In this document: in pieces, positions 4,261 through 38,629 of the stretch
Layout of the letters: the number at the start of each line of letters is the position of its first letter
Numbering within the stretch: the first letter of the stretch is position 1
Assembly (NCBI GenBank): GCA_010909165.1
Contig: MU008198.1
Span: forward strand, 402,216 to 466,215
Source of the DNA: Anthoceros angustus
Lineage: Eukaryota > Plantae > Anthocerotophyta
DNA: 64,000 nt
Direction of reading: 5' to 3'
Notes under the pieces: model-generated
What the model was told of the DNA's origin: nothing
Databases searched by the model: none
The model's input: the letters and a program-made list of their open reading frames with translations, nothing else
Translations under genes and position numbers: made by a program

Positions 4261-4879
4261 GGAACAATTCAAGGATGATTCATGAAACCCTATTATAGGG
4301 TTTCATGAATTAGAGACCATATTAGATCATTCATAATTATGTAAACCCAATTCCTTCTATCGGCTAAATCACCTTTAAAAGTCTTCTTTCGTGTTATTTA
4401 GCTGGTTTAGATCAATTGCCACGCTATTCACATCAAGTGTTTTATTTTCCATCATTCTCATTAGGTGTTTTATTTTGATCGCTATTCTAGAAATCTATTC
4501 GATTCGTATTGGTCATCAACGAGATGTTATCAATAAAATTAAAACTTGAATGTTCCTTGCATTCTAGGCTAACCAAGCTACCACGTTCCTTAGTAAAGGT
4601 CATGTTCTTCGCATTCGAGGCTAACCAAGCTTCCACATCCCTAAGGACGTGTTATTAGGTAAAGGCACGATATCAAAAGCCCATTAAGCTGAATTTGGTG
4701 ACAAGATGCTTGGTCTTGAAGTTCGAGAATTGATAAAGCAAAGTGAATGGTTGTCTTGAAATTAAACTTCCTTTGACTTTGAACCACATATTAAATAATT
4801 TATTTAAATCCTTTGGCTTTGAATTATTTACTCCACCTAATAACTTCATCTCTTGATTATGTATCATCCCACCTACTAC

Positions 4880-6470: not shown

Positions 6471-6911
6471 TGTCTAAACATGCTGCGCAACCAGGATTGA
6501 ATAAGACTAGCATGAAAGTTGAAAAAAGATTTAGTCTAAGTGCTCAAATGTTTAGATAACTTTAGGGGCACCTTTAATACTAGTGGTGTTAGTTTAGCCT
6601 AGACACTCCATGGAGCTATACACGTCGTTGCTTACGAAAAAGTGTACAATGGCATGTTTGTCGTTGATTAGTGGGCAGCACCAGGATCATGATCTGGTGC
6701 GTCTAAAGACTCTAAGACGCAAGACGTTCTCAGTTTGAATGACCACATAGCCATTACTGCTCAGAAACTGTGGACAAGAGGATGGGGTTCAAACAACTCA
6801 TGGAATCCGACCCATCTGAGAAATTGTGTGCAAAGGATGATGTACAAAGAGAGCACTGTACAAGGAGATGTGCAGCAGAAGAGAAACAGGTTTGCTTCTT
6901 TGCTAAAACCG

Positions 6912-8171
6912 CTACTCTTCTTTGGGGTACACAGGCAAGTCGTCCTCAAACCACGTGCGGAGACCGTTGTCAAGATGAAGGACGTTGGTGTATCCGTCCA
7001 GCGTCAGCAGATAAGCAGCTATCAATGACCTACACACAGAAAGGTACAGTGTGTCCCATATGTAAGCAGTGCAGAAACAGTGACCCATCCTAAGACGCGC
7101 CCTCTAGCTTGCCTTACCTGGACTGGACTCCATCTGTTAGATTTGGACTCGGCTTCAATGTACCGCCAGATGCACAAACAACAATGATCTTGGCATCCTT
7201 GCCCAACTTGGCGTTCACTTCTGCCAATCAAAACCACACCAGGGAATGAGAAGGAATCGGAAATACCTTGATTCCTTGCCCTCTGCCAGAGCTGGAGTGG
7301 CTTTTGTGGTTCCACCCATGTCGCAGGCTACAATGAGCGGCGACTCCTTGGAGAACTTTGAATTAGTTTCTGATGAGAGAACATGGCAGATCATTTCATA
7401 TGCCTTTCCTTCCATCAGCCCCGCCCGGCCCTTGGGCATATATGTTATGTATGGCAACCTTGGGATGGCTAGAGATGGCATACCTTTGACGAAGTCTGGA
7501 TTTTCCTCTGTCCCTTCAAAGATTCCGAAGAAGGCAAACGCAGCACGGCGGGCGATGTCCCAAGCAGTCCACTCCTTGATCAGCCGGTACACTTGCACAT
7601 TCACTGCACCCTCGGGATGGGACTGAGCAAATGCCCCTTCCGGCCTCACATCAAGGATGGTGTACCCTTGCTCCTGCGTCAGTCTGAATGCTTCCTTGGC
7701 TCGCACAGACCGCACCTGGGCAGGATCCGGAGACGTAAAAACCGCTGCTCTCCAACGCAGAGGCGCAAAATTTGTAACCACAATGCAGCCACAAACAAAC
7801 CTTGTTCTTCAGCAGAGCTTCCCGCTTCGTTCGCCACTCTGTCTCGGCTGCAGAAAATGCACACCAAACCATGTCAGGAAAACAACAAGCTCGCTGAAAT
7901 TCGGTGCCACCCACAAATATCGTCCTTGCCGGAGCTCACCAGGGGACTTGGCAGGGCCTGCCGCAATGGCAGCCACATGGAGAGGTCGCCAAGGGGCCCG
8001 CACTCTGCTGTCCCTCCTGCTGGAGAGCTGCCTTGAGGAAAAGCCCCTGGACGCGGGGGGCAACAGAGAGGAGGAAGCTGCAGCGGCAGGGGAAGCAGTC
8101 AGAGCTGACTGGGAGCTGGGCACAGCTGCGGCGGCCTGGAGGGCAGAAGAATGCACAAGCGAGAATGCCAT
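6912..8171 (-). CDS. STR14: Chloroplast rhodanese-like domain protein, STR14 type. Exons 8171-7940, 7847-7801, 7715-7484, [7369-7267 OR 7220-7118], 7029-6912
   Basis: Transit peptide MAFSLVHSSALQ..., then EWRTKREALLKNKVRSV..ILDVRPE..HPEGAVNV..YRLIKEWTAWDIARRAAFAFFGIFEGTEENPDF and RSLIAAYLLTLDGYTNVLHLDNGL, matching plant STR14 as recalled. All introns are GT-AG with consistent phases. Confidence 0.92.
7118..7220 (-). other. STR14 alternative exon B (103 nt; EVNAKLGKDAKIIVVCASGGTLKPSPNLTDGVQSR)
   Basis: cag acceptor at 7223-7221 and gtaagg donor at 7117; same phases and length as exon A. Confidence 0.85.
7267..7369 (-). other. STR14 alternative exon A (103 nt; ETNSKFSKESPLIVACDMGGTTKATPALAEGKESR)
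   Basis: cag acceptor at 7372-7370 and gtattt donor at 7266; enters phase 1, exits phase 2. Confidence 0.8.
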
Positions 8172-8621
8172 CTCCTCGTCCCTTCAAGCTGGGACTTGGA
8201 CTGGAGAAAGAGAGGCAGGACCAGGCTGTTTAGGTGCTCTTCCCTTGATGCCGGGACTTGGACTGGAGAACCAGAGAGAGACCCAGCTCTATTTGTGCTG
8301 TACAATGTGGATGAGCAGGAGATCTTTAGTGCTCCATCTGCCTCTAAGATTGAGGCCGTGAAATTTCGTGATTGGCTCCCACCAACTGTCCACATACATT
8401 CGCTCGGAGCCAGGTGAAAGAATCTTGCAGGCTTTCACACCGAGAGTAAGAGAGTAACAACAGATTCTCCAAGACTCAGACTCACCTGGACGCAAGTGGT
8501 GGATAATAACTCAGATTCATGGCTTGTCTAATATACATGTCAGGATTATACAGGACGCCTGCTTGATGTCTTCCGTTGGAACGGAAGTCGAGAAACAGGG
8601 TCAATAAGTCAGGTGGTTAGA

Positions 8622-17311: not shown

Positions 17312-20300
17312 TCATGGTCGACCCTTACAACTGCAACAACCAGCTGCGAATCGATGCACTCGGTACCCATCCCTTACAACAATGTCTCTCTGTTCAAGCC
17401 TTGACATGATCTCCGTGGAACTGTGGCAGTCACTGCACATGCGTAGATTCTTCGTTACCACCAAAGGTGTCCCACTCGGAGTGTTCAAGAGGCCAAAAGC
17501 CAGAGCTAGCTTCTCAGCATGCCCACAAAGCGCATCTTCCTTTTCCTTCTCAGACAGTGGCTTCAACACCAATTTTGTGTGAGGTTCGTGGCCTCCTTCC
17601 TCCTTCAGACGTGCATTCGTGCTCTCTACCTTGAGCGCAATATCTTCTCTCCTTTCTCCCACCAGGAACCTATGTACCTGCTTATTCACCTCAACGGTCG
17701 CCACTGCATGTTTCTTGTTAGCTCCTGCTACCATTCTCCGTGTTTCAATCCTGTCTACGTCTGTCCACCGACCTGCATCTGCATAGGCATTGGCCATTAG
17801 CACATAGGCGGGAGACTCCTGGGGGTCCAGCCTCACAATGTTTTCAAAACACCAGATCGCCCTCTTTATATCCCCGTGACTTTTGCAGGCACTCAACAAA
17901 GACGTCAGTCCCACAACATTCCTTTGGTCCGCGCATGATAATAGCACCTTCTCTGCCTCATCTAAATGGCCTGCACGCCCAAGAAGATCAATCATGCAAT
18001 TGTAATGCTCAAGAGTAGGTCTGATGCCATGTTGTTCAGCCATGGAATCAAAGTGCTTGCGACCCTCGTGGACAAGTCCCCAGTGACTGCATGCTACGAA
18101 AAGGCAAGTAAAAGTAGCAGCATTGGGCTGAATACCGGCAACTAACATCTCCTCAAAACAAGCTAGTGCCTTGTGACCTTCATCACAAGTACCATACCCA
18201 GATATCAGGGCATTCCATGTCACCACATCCTTTGTGTTCATGCTGTCAAAAACCTGGCGTGCATCTTCCAGTTCACCACATTTTGCATACATGTCCACCA
18301 GGCAGGTGCCCAACACTACATCATCCACCAGTCCTCTTTCGACAATCTGTGAGTGCAGATGCCTGCCCTTCTGTAAGGCACCAGTGCTTCCACAGGCCTT
18401 CAGAAGGCAAGCAAAAGTGACATTATCAGCCAAAATGAGGCCCGCATCCTCCATTCGTCCATACAGAACAAGCCCCTCTTGGCTGAGTCCTTGGTGTGCA
18501 TATCCAGCAATCAGGGCGGTCCATGTTACCACATTCTTTGTGGCCAAGCTGTCAAAAACCTGGCGTGCATCTTCCAGTTCACCACATTTTGCATACATGT
18601 CCACCAGGCAGGTGCCCAACACATCATCCAGCAGTCCTCTTTCGACAATCTGTGAGTGCAGCTGCCTGCCCTTCTGTAAGGCACCAGTGCTTCCACAGGC
18701 CTTCAGAAGGCAAAAGTAACATTATCAGCCAAAATGAGGCCCTCCTCCATTTGTCCATACACAAGCGCCTCTTGGCTGAGTCCTTGCTGTGCATACCCAG
18801 CAATCAGGGCTCCATGTCACCACATTCTTTGTGGCCAAGCTGTCAAAAACCTGGCGTGCATCTTCCAGTTCACCACATTTTGCATACATGTCCACCAGGC
18901 AGGTGCCAACACGTCATCCAGCAGTCCTCTTTGACAATCTGTGAGTGCAGCTGCCTGCCCTTCTGTAAGGCACCAGTGCTTGCACAGGCCTTCAGAAGGC
19001 AAGCAAAAGTAACATGGTCAGCCAAAATGAGGCCCTCCTCCATTTGTCCATACACAAGCGCCTCTTGGCCAAGTCCTTGCTGCATACCCAGCTATCAGGG
19101 CATTCCATGTCACCACATCCTTTGTGGCCATGCTGTCAAAAACCTGGCGTGCATCTTCCAGTTCACCACATTTTGCATACATGTCCACCAGGCAGGTGCC
19201 CAACACTACGTCATCCAGCAGTCCTCTTTCGACAATCTGTGAGTGCAGCTGCCTGCCCTTCTGTAAGGCACCAGTGCTTGCACAGGCCTTCAGAAGGCAA
19301 GCAAAAGTAACATGGTTAGCCAAAAGCAGGCCCTCCTGCTCCATTTGTCCATACACAACAAGTGCCTCATGTCCAAGCCCTTGCTGGGAATACCCAGATA
19401 TCAGGGCATTCCATGTCACCACATCCTTTGTGGCCATGCTGTCAAAAACCTGGCTTGCATCTTTCAGTTCACCACATTTTGCATACATGTCCACAAGACA
19501 GGTGCCAACAAACAAGTCAGGAAGAATGCCACTGTGCAACACATCACAATGCACTTCTCTGCCAGAGTCCAAGTCCGCTGCAAATGCACAAGCTTGAAGG
19601 ACAGCTACAAAGACGTGAGCATCGGCCTTCACTCCTGACCTACGCATCTCACGGTACAGTTGTATGGCCACCTTAGGTTTCCCATGCTTAGCATATGCAG
19701 AGATGATGGCAGACCACATGAAGGAATTTGGTTTGCGCACCCTGGTGAACACATCCATGGCCTCCTCTAGCCTACCTCCACATGCATACATGCGCAAGAA
19801 ATGGTTCCCCAAGTATGCATTCGACTCGTACCCAAGTTTGATACTGAGATCATGAACTCGTCGCCCCACGACCAAATCCTTCTTAGCTGTACACAGTTTC
19901 AGCACAGTGTAAAACAGAGACTGAGAAATGCCATAGTCTGTCCGTGCCAGAGCTTCGAGGGCTTCAACGGCCTCAGAAAGCTTCCCCTGCTGACATAACA
20001 TGCTCACGGCTCCAGCCGTTACGACGCCCATTCGCGATCCTGCACGCCTGCCAGGCTCAGGCTTATCCGGAGAGCTGGACTCGGAAGGAGAGGCACCATG
20101 ACCCATCTGCAGATCCAAGGAAAAGAGCTGCTCATCGACCCAAGGGGGCTTCAACATGCTGTTTAACCACAGCACCTCGCCAGATCCCTTACGCCGGAAG
20201 TCAGGCGAACGGGAGCTCTTCTTATCGCGTCTGTTGTCCCACCACATGGTTGGGTCCAGAAAAAATTGTTGCCACAAGTGCTCCTGCTCCTGGCAACGAC

Positions 20301-35861: not shown

Positions 35862-38358
35862 TCAAATTTGTTCAAAATAACGATTCCGTTCCCAGTCCGT
35901 CACAGATTGCAAAAAGGCCAGGTGCTCGGTGTGGAAGAAATGAGCATAGTGATGGTGGACGTCCTCCCCTCCTAAGAGCTGTTTCGCGAACGAGCTCTCC
36001 TTAAATGCTTCTATAGCTTCTCCCTGTAGAAAAAATAGGAAACGAATGAAACCCAGAAAAACTACTCTACAGAGGGACCTTCCCGCAAGCATGTGAGGCT
36101 TACCAAAGACTGCGGAACTTTGAACAAGTCTTGAGCATTGACGTAGGCATCTCCCTTGTGTTGAGGCGGAGGCTCGATTTTGTTGCGAATGCCGTCCAGA
36201 CCTGACCCCAGGGCGGCAGCGAAGGCCAAGTACGGGTTGCAATCGGCCCCAGGTAATCGGCATTCCACCCTCAGGGACTTGCCTGATCCCAATACTCTGA
36301 ACGGCGTGGTCCGGTTGTCAAGACTCCTGCGTGATCCGTGTCAGGTAGCCTGTTCGCTTTGCCCTTGAGCCGAAATTAACCAATAACGCTAGCATGATCT
36401 CAGCTTACCATGCAATGTGCGTTGGAGCCCAGCTTCCAGCTATGAACCGCTTGTAGGAGTTGACAGTTGGTGCATAGAACACCATCATTTCCCTCGTGTG
36501 CTTCATCCATCCGCCTAGGAACCACCGGAACTCGTCACTGAGAGGCCACATGCAGAGTTCTGTTCAGTCAAGGCATTTTCCGAGCTGGAAACAGGATATG
36601 TGGAAACTTTCATCATCCTCAACCTGCATGATAAGGAGTCCAGTTTGCTGTCACCGTGGAAGATGTTGGTCCCATCTCTCCACAGACTTAGGTGGATGTG
36701 GGAGCTTGATCCGGGTTGGGATGAATCAGGTTTGGCCATGAATGTGACAGACACTCCCAAAGACTCTGCAAGCTCCTTCAGGCACTGGATCATGGAGAGC
36801 ACTTCGACGACATGAGATTGGCCAGTACCGTTATCTTTGTCATGCTTTGTAGAAAGGAGGATAACAACCCACCTGCTTGTACACTACATGACGATCTGCC
36901 ATCTCCAGCACTGTCCCGTATTTGACATTTAGCTCGTGCTGTCCGTGACCATATTCTCCTTTGCTGCAGTATGGGGCAGACACTGCATTAAGGGGGGCAG
37001 TTCATCAGATGATGTTAAAGCTGTGAGGCTTGCAGACTGTACCTGTTTTCCACAGGAACCCCGGATGCTTCCAGGTGCTTCCGTGCTGGCCCTGCAGAGG
37101 TGGATTAGAACATGAGGCTGCTGAGTTCAGGAAGATGTTTTACGAGTCGTCAATACCATTGAAGAACTCCTCCCGTGTTCCTTGCAGGATGTGATAGTCT
37201 TCGTTGTGCCATCCTGCAGGTCTCAACCTCGCGTAGCCTTTCTCCTATCCAATTCCGGACCACGCTCAGAAGACCGCACTTTACCATTGCTGTGCAGGAC
37301 AGGAGTCGCTGACAGGGGATTGTGTACGTCACGTTACCTTGGCTTCCTCATAGCTGTCTCGATAAATAAAATACTCCAGTTCTGATGCAGCCTTGGGAGT
37401 CAGATTTCCCAACTCCTTCGCAGCTGTAAGCTGATTCCTCAGGACAGATCTCGGAGCATGAGGTGCCCACGCATGGGTACTGTCATCGACTACATCACAC
37501 AACACCAGTGCTGTTTTATCCAGCCTGCATGAAAACAACAACCCAACACATCAGCCACCAACATTGCTTTCAGACTTCCATGTAGCGGCTGAATCGAGAC
37601 TCACCAGCTTGCCACTCTCAGAGTGCTCATGTCAGGCACAAGATGGATATCCCCATAGCCCAAGTCCCAGCTAGCAAACCTGTAACCCCGAACGGGCTGC
37701 ATATCCATATCCGTAGCAAGCAGATACGAACAAGCATGTGTCCCATCTTGAACTGCACTGCTCAGGAAGAATCCTGGTGTGTACCTGAAACCCCCAGACG
37801 AATTTCTGGTCAGATGGCCTTGATTTCAGCAGCTCCAATCCAAAGCATAGCAGAACATGTTAGCCTTGACTTCATGTAACTTGCCTCTTGCCTACTGTTC
37901 GGCCATAGCAATCTGTCATCCCCACAATCACAGTTTCTATCTCCCCCTCGTCTGCCAGCTTCCGAAATTGCTCGAGTGTCAACATCCCCCTGACCTTCGA
38001 TTCCGTTGCTGTCGCCGCTGCTGAGCTTACCGGCCTGCTGAAAACACTTCTCCTGTACAGCCTGCCTCGTCGAATTCACAGAACGAACAGGACTTGTCAT
38101 CTTTTGAAGCTGCTCGTGGCTGCCTTGCAGTGGCAGCAGTCGAAAGTGCACAGGCAATTCAGTCGTGATCGAAATTTTGCCAAGTGGCGGTTTCACTCAG
38201 GCATACCATGTAGAAGCGGAGGGAGTATTATCATCCAAAAACAGTCCTGATTGACTGTCTGAGGTGCGCACTTTCCATGAGCTGCTGGAAAACCGACGCA
38301 AAGCTTGAGCTGCAGAAGCCAGGTACTGGCGACAAGAGAATTTCACGGCAGCGGCCAT
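35862..38358 (-). CDS. Type I glutamine synthetase-family enzyme of the bacterial GlnA4/gamma-glutamylpolyamine synthetase type, with an N-terminal organellar transit peptide; multi-exon
   Basis: Spliced blocks: RGMLTLEQFRKLADEGEIETVIVGMTDCYGRTVGKR, ASWDLGYGD, PHAPRSVL, ASELEYF, ECGPGQHELN, SVTFMAKP..GSSSHIHLSLW, APTVNSYKRF..GSWAPT, DNRT..RV..RVECRLPGADCNPYLA, VTDWERNRYFEQI*. ATG at 38358 (alternative 38400). One GC-AG donor at 37884. Confidence 0.9.
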
Positions 38359-38629
38359 CAGGATTTTCGAGACTGCGAGGCTGCAGCTGTTGGCAAACAT
38401 GTAAAGCTCGTGGCGGCTCAAAATGCTATATGTAGAACAAAGATGCCGTCCCAGAGGAATCGTGGAATGATTCGTACGATTTAAGGATACATCGCCTGCC
38501 ACAGGAAAGATTACCTTCCTGGGAAGAAGGAAAAAGAAGAGCGGTAGTCAACACACCTCCTCCGATGGAAGACGTGTGAACGTCGGGAGATAGATGAAAC
38601 CCAACATTTTAGGCAAGATGAGAGAAACA

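What the first reader, a model, noticed from the sequence alone, without database searches (positions are those of the whole stretch)
7118..7369. Tandem duplicated, same-phase exons in rhodanese STR14: candidate mutually exclusive splicing that swaps the predicted active-site loop
Seen in sequence: between the shared exons 7715-7484 and 7029-6912 lie two homologous exons of exactly 103 nt each. Both enter in phase 1 and exit in phase 2, have intact AG/GT sites and no stops, and encode ETNSKFSKESPLIVACDMGGTTKATPALAEGKESR and EVNAKLGKDAKIIVVCASGGTLKPSPNLTDGVQSR (16/35 identical). Including both or neither shifts the frame, and the spacer is only 46 nt, much shorter than the gene's other introns (85-114 nt), which could hinder joint inclusion. 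Established: in single-domain rhodaneses the Cys and the residues after it form the catalytic loop that sets substrate preference, and mutually exclusive exons are rare in plants. Inference: two STR14 isoforms with different active-site loops (CDMGGT vs CASGGT), both kept by selection given the deep divergence without decay. I do not know of this being described.
Basis: partly seen in the sequence, partly recalled or inferred. Interest (0 to 1): 0.86.

Follow-up and report, generated by a model that had tools for sequence, protein, structure and literature searches.

The report
Ancient twin exon in bryophyte STR14
A chloroplast rhodanese gene (STR14) of a probable hornwort has two intact tandem copies of its active-site exon, and the same pair is kept in liverworts and a moss-like genome under protein-level selection, yet every transcript seen so far uses only the downstream copy on its own.

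Summary
On the minus strand an STR14 (At4g27700-type) rhodanese gene has two 103-nt exons, 4a at 7369-7267 and 4b at 7220-7118. Both have AG/GT sites and no stops, and 46 nt separate them. Including both or neither shifts the frame.

New here: the same pair, upstream A-type and downstream B-type, both 103 nt with a 51-65 nt spacer, is present in Marchantia polymorpha, M. paleacea, Riccia fluitans and a moss-like metagenome contig. It is absent from Sphagnum, Amborella and the intronless Physcomitrium gene. A-type exons form one clade (support 92/85). They change mostly at synonymous sites (p about 0.001) and share residues at sites that never or rarely vary in 120 B-type orthologs. The upstream exon is therefore an old, selected coding exon and not debris.

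The either-or splicing itself is not shown. Assembled RNA contigs from four runs, each labelled a different organism, all join exon 3 to 4b to exon 5. Exon 4a appears only in low-depth unspliced contigs. Marchantia annotations hold A-exon isoforms only as A+B or spacer-retained forms that end early.

Best reading (about 0.6): 4b is the default exon and 4a is a minor or conditional alternative active-site exon. The main rival is regulated unproductive splicing. I found no paper describing the pair. Two earlier scan notes report similar exon pairs in other genes of this genome.

The parts
7940..8171 (-). STR14 exon 1 (start codon at 8171; transit-peptide-like N-terminus)
   Evidence: RNA contigs of four runs cover it and join 7940 to 7847.
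7801..7847 (-). STR14 exon 2 (47 nt)
   Evidence: Joints 7940->7847 and 7801->7715 appear in RNA contigs.
7484..7715 (-). STR14 exon 3 (232 nt). It starts the rhodanese domain and ends in phase 1.
   Evidence: RNA contigs join 7484 directly to 7220 in all four runs.
7370..7483 (-). Intron between exon 3 and exon 4a (114 nt)
   Evidence: It is covered only by low-depth unspliced contigs in runs X2 and X8. Against organism B it has 7 substitutions and a 5-nt indel.
7267..7369 (-). Exon 4a (A-type, 103 nt, phase 1 to 2), ETNSKFSKESPLIVACDMGGTTKATPALAEGKESR. It is the conserved alternative copy of the active-site exon and is not seen spliced in the RNA contigs.
   Evidence: AG/GT, no stop. Orthologous A exons in Marchantia, Riccia and the moss-like L008. 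One clade with support 92/85. Synonymous exceeds nonsynonymous change, p about 0.001. No splice joint.
7221..7266 (-). Spacer intron between 4a and 4b (46 nt). Its 3' part is GU-rich, TGTGGTTTTGATTGGCAG.
   Evidence: The spacer stays at 46-65 nt in five genomes while flanking introns range from 88 to 1325 nt. Sequence likeness to the liverwort spacers is weak (p 0.01-0.02).
7118..7220 (-). Exon 4b (B-type, 103 nt), EVNAKLGKDAKIIVVCASGGTLKPSPNLTDGVQSR. It is the canonical exon and the one used in all assembled transcripts.
   Evidence: Joints 7484->7220 and 7118->7029 in runs X1, X2, X7 and X8. It is 22.2/35 identical on average to 120 orthologs, against 16.3/35 for 4a.
6912..7029 (-). STR14 exon 5 (last coding exon, stop at 6914-6912). 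It holds the helix and strand that complete the rhodanese domain.
   Evidence: Joint 7118->7029. It aligns to the C-terminal part of solved rhodaneses 6MXV and 1TQ1 (via the Marchantia ortholog).

Best explanation
The two exons come from one tandem duplication of the STR14 active-site exon. That duplication happened no later than the common ancestor of hornworts, liverworts and mosses. The downstream copy (4b, B-type) is the default exon and gives the canonical plastid rhodanese. The upstream copy (4a, A-type) is a second, still-coding version of the same 35 residues. It keeps the catalytic Cys and the GGT of the loop. It carries its own conserved residues: Pro at position 11, Met in the loop (C-x-M-G-G-T), Ala at position 27 and Lys-Glu at positions 32-33.

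The most likely use of 4a is a minor, tissue- or condition-specific mRNA that joins exon 3 to 4a to exon 5. That mRNA would encode an STR14 with an altered active-site loop and an altered version of the segment that HMMER leaves unaligned against AtStr16 just after the loop.

Each exon is 103 nt, so a productive mRNA can hold only one of them. Double inclusion shifts the frame: the stop falls 6 codons into B in the liverworts and the moss-like contig, and in exon 5 in the hornwort. The spacer, kept at 46-65 nt, probably helps couple or bias the choice, but it does not block A-to-B splicing absolutely.

Shown: the anatomy, the age, coding-type selection on A, and B as the dominant path. Inferred: that an A-only mRNA and protein exist, and what the A-type loop does.
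For: Anatomy.

The gene is STR14. AtStr14 is plastidic and pairs with thioredoxin f1 in BiFC (PMC4618214).

The same architecture (A upstream, B downstream, both 103 nt, AG/GT, spacer 51, 52, 65 and 61 nt) is found in M. polymorpha L001, M. paleacea L007, R. fluitans L003 and the moss-like L008. Flanking introns there are 286-1325 nt.

A exons form one clade (92/85) with the branching hornwort,(moss,(Marchantia,Riccia)), which mirrors the species tree.

Coding-type selection on A: differences concentrate at codon position 3 (Mpol-Rflu 10/3/15, p=0.007). Synonymous against nonsynonymous Fisher tests give p=0.0006-0.003 for every A-A pair, and dN/dS is about 0.2, like B.

All four distinct A sequences share P11, M18, A27, K32 and E33, where 120 B-type orthologs have K/R, S/A/T (one F), N/S, mostly Q, and invariant Q. 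They keep K8, C16, G19, G20, T21, G31, S34 and R35.

The A isoform scores as a full rhodanese domain (42.3 bits against 44.3).

The A acceptor, and in the newer models the A donor too, figure in Marchantia gene models (P0121, P0122, P0123).

The exon 3 to 4b interval, alone among this gene's introns, is present unspliced at 12-17% of the main depth in two runs.

Weak hint: the X8 contig that carries 4a ends at 7265. That is exactly where the unspliced sequence (GTA) and a 4a-to-exon-5 joint (GTC) would part in an assembly graph.
Against: No A-only transcript or protein was seen anywhere. The dominant contig in all four RNA runs uses 4b, and runs X1 and X7 do not cover 4a at all.

In X2 the 4a-bearing contig is fully unspliced from exon 3 into 4b.

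The only A-exon isoforms on record (Marchantia) are A+B or A+spacer+B, and both end early. A stable productive A-only mRNA would be expected to be easier to assemble than these.

No A-type protein turned up with hornwort or Marchantia queries in the 5.8-billion-protein collection, apart from those truncated models. No KESR|SLIAAY junction was found in metagenome contigs.

These blanks are weak. Logan contigs drop rare variants, and the protein collection lacks even the hornwort B isoform.

The clade test cannot reject independent duplications (p-AU 0.30 and 0.07).
Confidence: 0.6

Rival explanations
1. Regulated unproductive splicing. The A exon is a 'poison' cassette. When it is included, always together with B or with the spacer retained, the frame shifts and the mRNA is degraded or gives a dead protein. 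This would tune STR14 output, and no A-only protein would exist.
For: All recorded A-exon isoforms are of this kind: P0121 and P0123 are e3-A-B ending ...ESRGERKAG*, and P0122 is e3-A-spacer-B. The stop falls 6 codons into B in the liverworts and the moss-like contig. The A-spacer-B block is nearly identical between M. polymorpha and M. paleacea, with 1 substitution in 257 nt where 22.8 are expected (P=3e-9). This includes silent sites and the spacer and is typical of splicing-regulatory blocks. In the hornwort, 4a is seen only in unspliced RNA.
Against: A poison exon needs no reading frame. Yet A exons show threefold more synonymous than nonsynonymous change, keep the catalytic Cys and GGT, keep exactly 103 nt and have no stop in five genomes. 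In the hornwort, A+B has no stop until the last exon, so the usual decay rule would not apply. This reading can coexist with the best explanation as a by-product.
Confidence: 0.2
2. Relic in this lineage. The A exon was functional in the bryophyte ancestor and may still be in liverworts, but in this hornwort it is no longer used and has simply not decayed yet.
For: No spliced use was seen in four runs. The only two differences from organisms B and D inside 4a are both nonsynonymous: 7366 changes T to S and 7361 changes S to A (my reading of the codons). The A exon has been lost in other lineages: Sphagnum, Amborella, the intronless Physcomitrium gene, and a frameshifted remnant in a Riccia sorocarpa fragment.
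Against: 4a is the least diverged segment of the gene against organism B: 2/103, compared with 7/114 plus an indel in the adjoining intron (Fisher p=0.18, so this is only a trend). Splice sites, length and frame are intact, and all A-type signature residues are present. The R. sorocarpa remnant shows how a disused A exon looks, namely frameshifted.
Confidence: 0.1
3. The functional A product is the truncated protein (exons 1-3 plus A plus a short shifted tail). It would act without the last part of the rhodanese domain.
For: It would explain coding-type selection on A together with the recorded Marchantia isoforms.
Against: The tail is not conserved: GERKAG, GEIAVQ and CNFQAG, and a tail of more than 34 residues in the hornwort. 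The missing exon 5 holds the helix and strand that align to solved rhodaneses, so a fold without it is unlikely (inference).
Confidence: 0.05
4. The A-type exons arose by separate duplications in hornworts, liverworts and mosses and became alike by convergence.
For: With 35 columns the AU test does not reject hornwort A with hornwort B (p 0.30) or moss A with moss B (p 0.07).
Against: The best tree joins all A exons (92/85) in species-tree order. Five shared derived residues sit at conserved sites. Position, length, phase and the tiny spacer are the same everywhere.
Confidence: 0.05

Closest known systems
Mutually exclusive exon pairs made by tandem exon duplication (animal examples from my own knowledge: tropomyosin exons 2/3, FGFR2 IIIb/IIIc; ATE1 7a/7b as in PMC7797038; general model in PMC6071210)
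   Same: Adjacent homologous exons of equal length and phase, each with its own splice sites. Frame incompatibility applies when both or neither is used. The intervening intron is very short. Both copies are conserved over long times, and the flanks are highly conserved.
   Different: The either-or use is not demonstrated here: only the B path is seen. I found no unusual RNA fold in the block (z 0.2 and -0.46).
Poison exons / regulated unproductive splicing coupled to nonsense-mediated decay
   Same: Including A together with B gives an early stop in the recorded Marchantia isoforms. The block is conserved at nucleotide level between two Marchantia species.
   Different: The A exon evolves like translated sequence and keeps catalytic residues. 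A pure poison exon has no need to do so.
STR14 / AtStr14 (At4g27700), the single-domain plastid rhodanese of land plants
   Same: 58-63% identity to named STR14 proteins of bryophytes and seed plants, a full Pfam rhodanese domain, and the loop C-x-x-G-G-T followed by KPSxNLxxGxQSR in the B isoform.
   Different: All 120 retrieved orthologous proteins are B-type, and none has the A signature. The second active-site exon is found only in bryophyte genomes so far.
Other tandem exon pairs noted in this same genome by the scan (AGPase large subunit, CASTOR/POLLUX)
   Same: The pattern described in the notes is the same: two intact tandem copies of one exon. For AGPase the notes also say that transcripts use only the downstream copy (AI notes that I did not check).
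   Different: They are different genes. I did not test them.

Membership tests
Mutually exclusive exon pair (tandem exon duplication type) | Two adjacent homologous exons of the same length and phase, each with acceptor and donor sites | tested here: met
   103 nt each, phase 1 to 2, AG/GT, 16/35 identical residues. The same holds in four other genomes.
Mutually exclusive exon pair (tandem exon duplication type) | Each exon is found joined on its own to both flanking constitutive exons in mature mRNA | tested here: not met
   One search shows only e3-4b-e5 joints in four runs and no 4a joint. Contigs drop rare variants, so absence is not proven. Marchantia models lack an A-only form.
Mutually exclusive exon pair (tandem exon duplication type) | Transcripts with both or neither exon are non-productive | tested here: met
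   (frameshift either way). (stop 6 codons into B in liverworts and the moss-like contig; stop in exon 5 in the hornwort). P0121 and P0122 are such forms.
Mutually exclusive exon pair (tandem exon duplication type) | Both copies are kept under purifying selection as coding sequence | tested here: met
   synonymous exceeds nonsynonymous change for A (p 0.0006-0.003) and for B. A-specific conserved residues.
Mutually exclusive exon pair (tandem exon duplication type) | A mechanism that enforces the choice (steric block by a short intron, competing RNA structures, or decay of wrong forms) | tested here: inconclusive
   The spacer is kept at 46-65 nt, but it is spliced in one Marchantia model. There is no excess RNA structure. 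Frame and early stop are present.
Rhodanese superfamily, STR14 orthogroup | Rhodanese domain match above the curated cut-off | tested here: met
   PF00581 at 44.3 bits (B) and 42.3 bits (A), with a cut-off of 22.2.
Rhodanese superfamily, STR14 orthogroup | Closest relatives are named STR14 proteins, and the protein falls among plant STR14 sequences in a tree | tested here: met
   (E 1e-85 to 1e-74 against 'rhodanese-like domain-containing protein 14, chloroplastic'). (it groups with bryophyte STR14).
Rhodanese superfamily, STR14 orthogroup | Catalytic Cys at the start of the six-residue loop | tested here: met
   Cys16 is invariant in 120 orthologs and in all A and B exons. It aligns to the Cys of CQSGGR in AtStr16, 1TQ1.
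Rhodanese superfamily, STR14 orthogroup | Sulfurtransferase activity and plastid location of either isoform | not testable with these tools
   Known only for Arabidopsis AtStr14 (PMC4618214).
Poison exon / unproductive splicing | Inclusion leads to a premature stop | tested here: met
   For A together with B.
Poison exon / unproductive splicing | Exon sequence is free of protein-level constraint | tested here: not met
   the pattern is clearly of coding type.

The most novel reading that the evidence does not exclude
STR14 of bryophytes carries a mutually exclusive exon switch that dates back at least to the common ancestor of the three bryophyte groups (my own estimate: several hundred million years). 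It would swap the active-site loop and the segment after it in a plastid rhodanese, held together by a spacer kept at 46-65 nt and a conserved GU-rich element, and the A isoform would be made only in particular tissues or conditions. That would be one of the oldest alternative-exon switches known in plants. It would also be a natural experiment on rhodanese substrate or partner choice, for example thioredoxin f.
Probability: 0.45. Interest if true: 0.8.

Novelty: new member of a known kind. Interest (0 to 1): 0.62.

Why it matters
To my knowledge, few exon pairs made by tandem duplication and used either-or are documented in plants, and conserved, testable cases are wanted. This pair is kept in all three bryophyte groups under coding-type selection. 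It sits on the catalytic loop of an enzyme whose cellular role is still unclear, and it occurs in Marchantia, where isoform-specific knock-outs and expression are routine. If the A isoform exists, it gives two natural active-site variants of one plastid sulfurtransferase to compare. If it does not, the case shows a translated-looking exon maintained for another reason, such as unproductive splicing, which would itself need explaining. The finding also corrects gene models: the Marchantia 'isoform 2' proteins are frameshift products of double inclusion.

Tried and rejected
1. Hornwort relatives in the protein collection: none were found, and even the window's own B isoform is not on record. Deeper hornwort comparison was therefore impossible.

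2. A-type proteins by a region-restricted search: the hornwort query gave nothing. The Marchantia query found only the truncated models.

3. Metagenome scans found nothing, either for the A peptide or for a degenerate KESR|SLIAAYLL junction pattern.

4. Competing or unusual RNA structure in the A-spacer-B block was not found: z 0.20 for Marchantia and -0.46 for the window.

5. DNA was not obtainable for the ferns: Ceratopteris is not on record and the Adiantum file is too large. Tracheophyte absence at genome level therefore rests on Amborella alone, plus 120 B-type proteins.

6. Riccia sorocarpa, meant as a second Riccia for a silent-site test, turned out to be a fragmentary locus.

7. I did not run structure prediction of the A isoform. 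A model guided by B-type relatives would not discriminate anyway.

8. Steric exclusion by the 46-nt spacer as the sole mechanism is rejected as a general rule, because a Marchantia model splices the 51-nt spacer.

9. The shifted e1/e2 joint in X2 and X8 (7842/7935) is an alignment effect of a two-base difference and not alternative splicing (my reading).

A procedural point: the spliced isoform proteins had to be typed into, because no reference exists for them.
Full report
**1. What is in the window**

On the minus strand lies a six-exon gene.
- e1 is 8171-7940, e2 is 7847-7801 and e3 is 7715-7484.
- e4a is 7369-7267, e4b is 7220-7118, and e5 is 7029-6912 with the stop.
- Every exon is bounded by AG and GT.
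- e4a and e4b are both 103 nt. Both enter in phase 1, leave in phase 2, and have no stop.
- With either exon alone the product is 243 aa. With both or neither the frame shifts.
- The spacer is 46 nt. The other introns are 92, 85, 114 and 88 nt.
- The two exons are 57/103 identical in DNA: 21/34 at codon position 1, 25/35 at position 2 and 11/34 at position 3. Silent sites are saturated while replacement sites are not.

**2. What the gene is**

- Both isoforms match Pfam Rhodanese end to end (A 42.3 bits, B 44.3 bits, cut-off 22.2).
- The B isoform finds 487 relatives. The best are 54-72% identical and many are named 'rhodanese-like domain-containing protein 14, chloroplastic' or 'like AT4G27700'.
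- In a tree the window's protein sits among bryophyte STR14 sequences with no close named relative.
- I could not confirm the organism by name.
- Arabidopsis AtStr14 is plastidic and pairs with thioredoxin f1 in BiFC (PMC4618214).

**3. Which exon is the normal one**

- Against 120 orthologs, e4b shares 22.2 of 35 residues on average and e4a shares 16.3. None of the 120 proteins carries the e4a signature.
- I laid Logan RNA contigs of four runs, labelled as four different organisms, on 6700-8300.
- In every run the dominant contig joins 7484 to 7220 and 7118 to 7029. That is exon 3 to 4b to exon 5, at word depths of 229, 141-161, 27 and 290.
- No joint involving 4a was listed.
- 4a is covered only by low-depth unspliced contigs.
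  - In X2 one contig runs without a break from 7513 to 7193, at depth 24.
  - In X8 one contig runs from 7466 to 7265, at depth 35.
  - The gene's other introns have no cover in any run, so this is not DNA contamination. It is retention specific to the exon 3 to 4b interval.
- The X8 contig ends at 7265. That is exactly where the unspliced sequence (GTA...) and a 4a-to-exon-5 joint (GTC...) would diverge in an assembly graph. Its other end falls at no meaningful place, so I treat this only as a hint.
- Contigs drop rare variants, so the A path is unseen but not excluded.

**4. The pair is old and shared**

- The Marchantia polymorpha STR14 locus (L001) has an upstream exon at 4328-4430, EVASQFPKDSPVLLTCQMGGTLRVSSAANEGKESR. 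A 51-nt spacer follows, then the canonical exon at 4482-4584. Both exons are 103 nt with AG/GT.
- The same arrangement is found in three more genomes.
  - M. paleacea (L007) has a 52-nt spacer.
  - Riccia fluitans (L003) has a 65-nt spacer.
  - An 8-kb ENA metagenome contig (L008) has a 61-nt spacer. I found it by searching a profile of the A peptides against 1.84 billion representatives (P0137). Its STR14 protein groups with mosses: 77% identity to Physcomitrium, support 81/74.
- Three lineages lack the A exon.
  - Sphagnum has only the B exon, with no remnant in its roughly 870-nt intron.
  - Amborella has only B across an 8-kb gene.
  - The Physcomitrium gene is intronless.
- In the tree of the 35-residue peptides the four distinct A exons form one clade (92/85). 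They branch as hornwort,(moss-like,(Marchantia,Riccia)), which is the accepted species order. All B exons fall on the other side.
- With so few columns the AU test does not reject independent origins (p 0.30 for the hornwort, 0.07 for the moss-like contig).

**5. The upstream exon evolves as coding sequence**

- Between A exons of different lineages, differences pile up at third codon positions. For M. polymorpha against Riccia the counts are 10, 3 and 15 at positions 1, 2 and 3 (p=0.007).
- Synonymous change exceeds nonsynonymous change about threefold in every pair (Fisher p 0.0006-0.003). dN/dS is about 0.2, the same order as for the B exons.
- No A exon has an indel or a stop.
- All A exons keep the residues that never or almost never vary in 120 orthologs: K8, C16, G19, G20, T21, G31, S34 and R35.
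- All share their own residues where B is fixed or nearly so.
  - Position 11: P instead of K/R.
  - Position 18: M instead of S/A/T.
  - Position 27: A instead of N/S.
  - Position 32: K instead of mostly Q.
  - Position 33: E instead of Q (Q in 120 of 120).
- This is the pattern of a diverged but functional protein segment and not of decay.
- For contrast, a fragmentary STR14-like locus of Riccia sorocarpa holds a frameshifted A remnant.
- HMMER aligns the Cys to the catalytic Cys of AtStr16 (1TQ1). It leaves 14 STR14 residues after the C-x-x-G-G-T loop unaligned. A and B differ most in that segment and at loop positions 2-3.

**6. Signs of splicing control**

- The spacer has stayed at 46-65 nt in five genomes, while the flanking introns range from 88 to 1325 nt.
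- Its 3' part keeps a GU-rich motif (TGTGG..TTGGATTG.CAG). The hornwort and liverwort spacers are weakly but measurably alike (p 0.01-0.02).
- Between M. polymorpha and M. paleacea the whole A-spacer-B block has one substitution and one indel in 257 nt. The other exons are 88-96% identical and the introns 76-83%. About 22.8 substitutions were expected (P=3e-9).
- No excess RNA structure was found.

**7. What the records say about A-exon transcripts**

- The protein collection holds Marchantia isoforms with the A exon, but none is A-only.
  - P0121 and P0123 (215 aa, Tak-2 and Tak-1 assemblies) join A to B and end ...ESRGERKAG*.
  - P0122 (232 aa, older models) reads from A through the retained spacer into B.
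- So the A acceptor, and in the newer models the A donor too, figure in annotated transcripts, and the 51-nt spacer can be removed. This argues against a purely steric block.
- Double inclusion stops 6 codons into B in the liverworts and the moss-like contig. In the hornwort the shifted frame runs into the last exon.

**8. Reading**

- The age, the fixed length, the coding-type substitution pattern and the A-specific conserved residues are hard to explain unless the A exon is translated in frame as part of a working protein. Because each exon is 103 nt, that requires mRNAs with A and without B.
- I therefore favour, at about 0.6, a default B isoform plus a minor or conditional A isoform. The A+B and retained forms would be by-products or a regulatory side-path.
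- The main rival, at about 0.2, is that A serves only unproductive splicing. It fits the recorded isoforms and the nucleotide-level conservation in Marchantia, but not the codon pattern.
- Other rivals rank lower: a relic in the hornwort alone (0.1), a functional truncated protein (0.05), and convergent independent duplications (0.05).

**9. Novelty**

- I found no paper on this pair.
- Either-or exon pairs from tandem duplication are a known kind, mostly from animals. This would be a new and unusually old plant member.
- Two earlier AI notes of this scan report similar pairs in AGPase and CASTOR genes of the same genome. I did not test them.

**10. Limits**

- Only one reads call was allowed, and it returned assembled contigs and not raw reads.
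- No hornwort beyond close congeners could be compared.
- Only one seed-plant locus was read as DNA.
- The moss origin of L008 rests on a tree with moderate support.

Noticed in passing
L001:4281-4605 and L007 (about 2290-2610): Between Marchantia polymorpha and M. paleacea the A exon, spacer and B exon are almost identical in DNA, with 1 substitution and 1 indel in 257 nt. This includes about 40 nt upstream and 20 nt downstream. The other STR14 exons are 88-96% identical and the introns 76-83%.
   Followed up: partly
L009:1001-1726: The Physcomitrium patens STR14 gene (P0151) is a single uninterrupted 726-nt reading frame of the B type. It looks like a retrocopy of the B mRNA. The moss-like contig L008 keeps introns and the A exon.
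   Followed up: no
L010:4399-4792: Riccia sorocarpa 'hypothetical protein R1sor_003649' (P0142) is built on a fragmentary STR14-like locus. It has a short exon-3 remnant, a frameshifted A-exon remnant (EFESVFPKDSPVTYRCQWG...) and an intact B exon. No exon 5 lies within 4 kb, and a second exon-3 piece lies on the other strand at 96-152.
   Followed up: partly
P0145, P0150 (Logan RNA contigs, organism unknown): These STR14-like transcripts sit on a long branch outside the land-plant set. They mix features of both exon types (...CSFGGTTKPSQNFTEGKESR|SLIAAY). They could show the state before the duplication if they come from an alga.
   Followed up: no
window:7193-7513: In RNA runs X2 and X8 the interval between exon 3 and exon 4b is present unspliced at about 12-17% of the main transcript depth. 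The gene's other introns have no cover at all.
   Followed up: partly
window:7221-7240; L001:4462-4481; L003:2620-2644; L008:4168-4189: The 3' end of the spacer, just before the B acceptor, is GU-rich and not a plain pyrimidine tract. It reads alike in the hornwort, the liverworts and the moss-like contig (TGTGG..TTGGATTG.CAG).
   Followed up: partly
P0002 residues 189-209 against PDB 1TQ1: When aligned by HMMER to the minimal rhodanese AtStr16, STR14 has 14 extra residues between the C-x-x-G-G loop and the following helix (TVKPSPNLADGSQS in Marchantia). This stretch is nearly invariant in B-type exons and is the part most changed in A-type exons.
   Followed up: no
window:17312-17720, 20125-20274, 35862-38400: Earlier first-reader notes on this window mention a DYW:KP-type editing-factor domain, an OSB-type motif fused to a PPR array, and a GlnA4-like enzyme with introns. 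I did not look at them.
   Followed up: no
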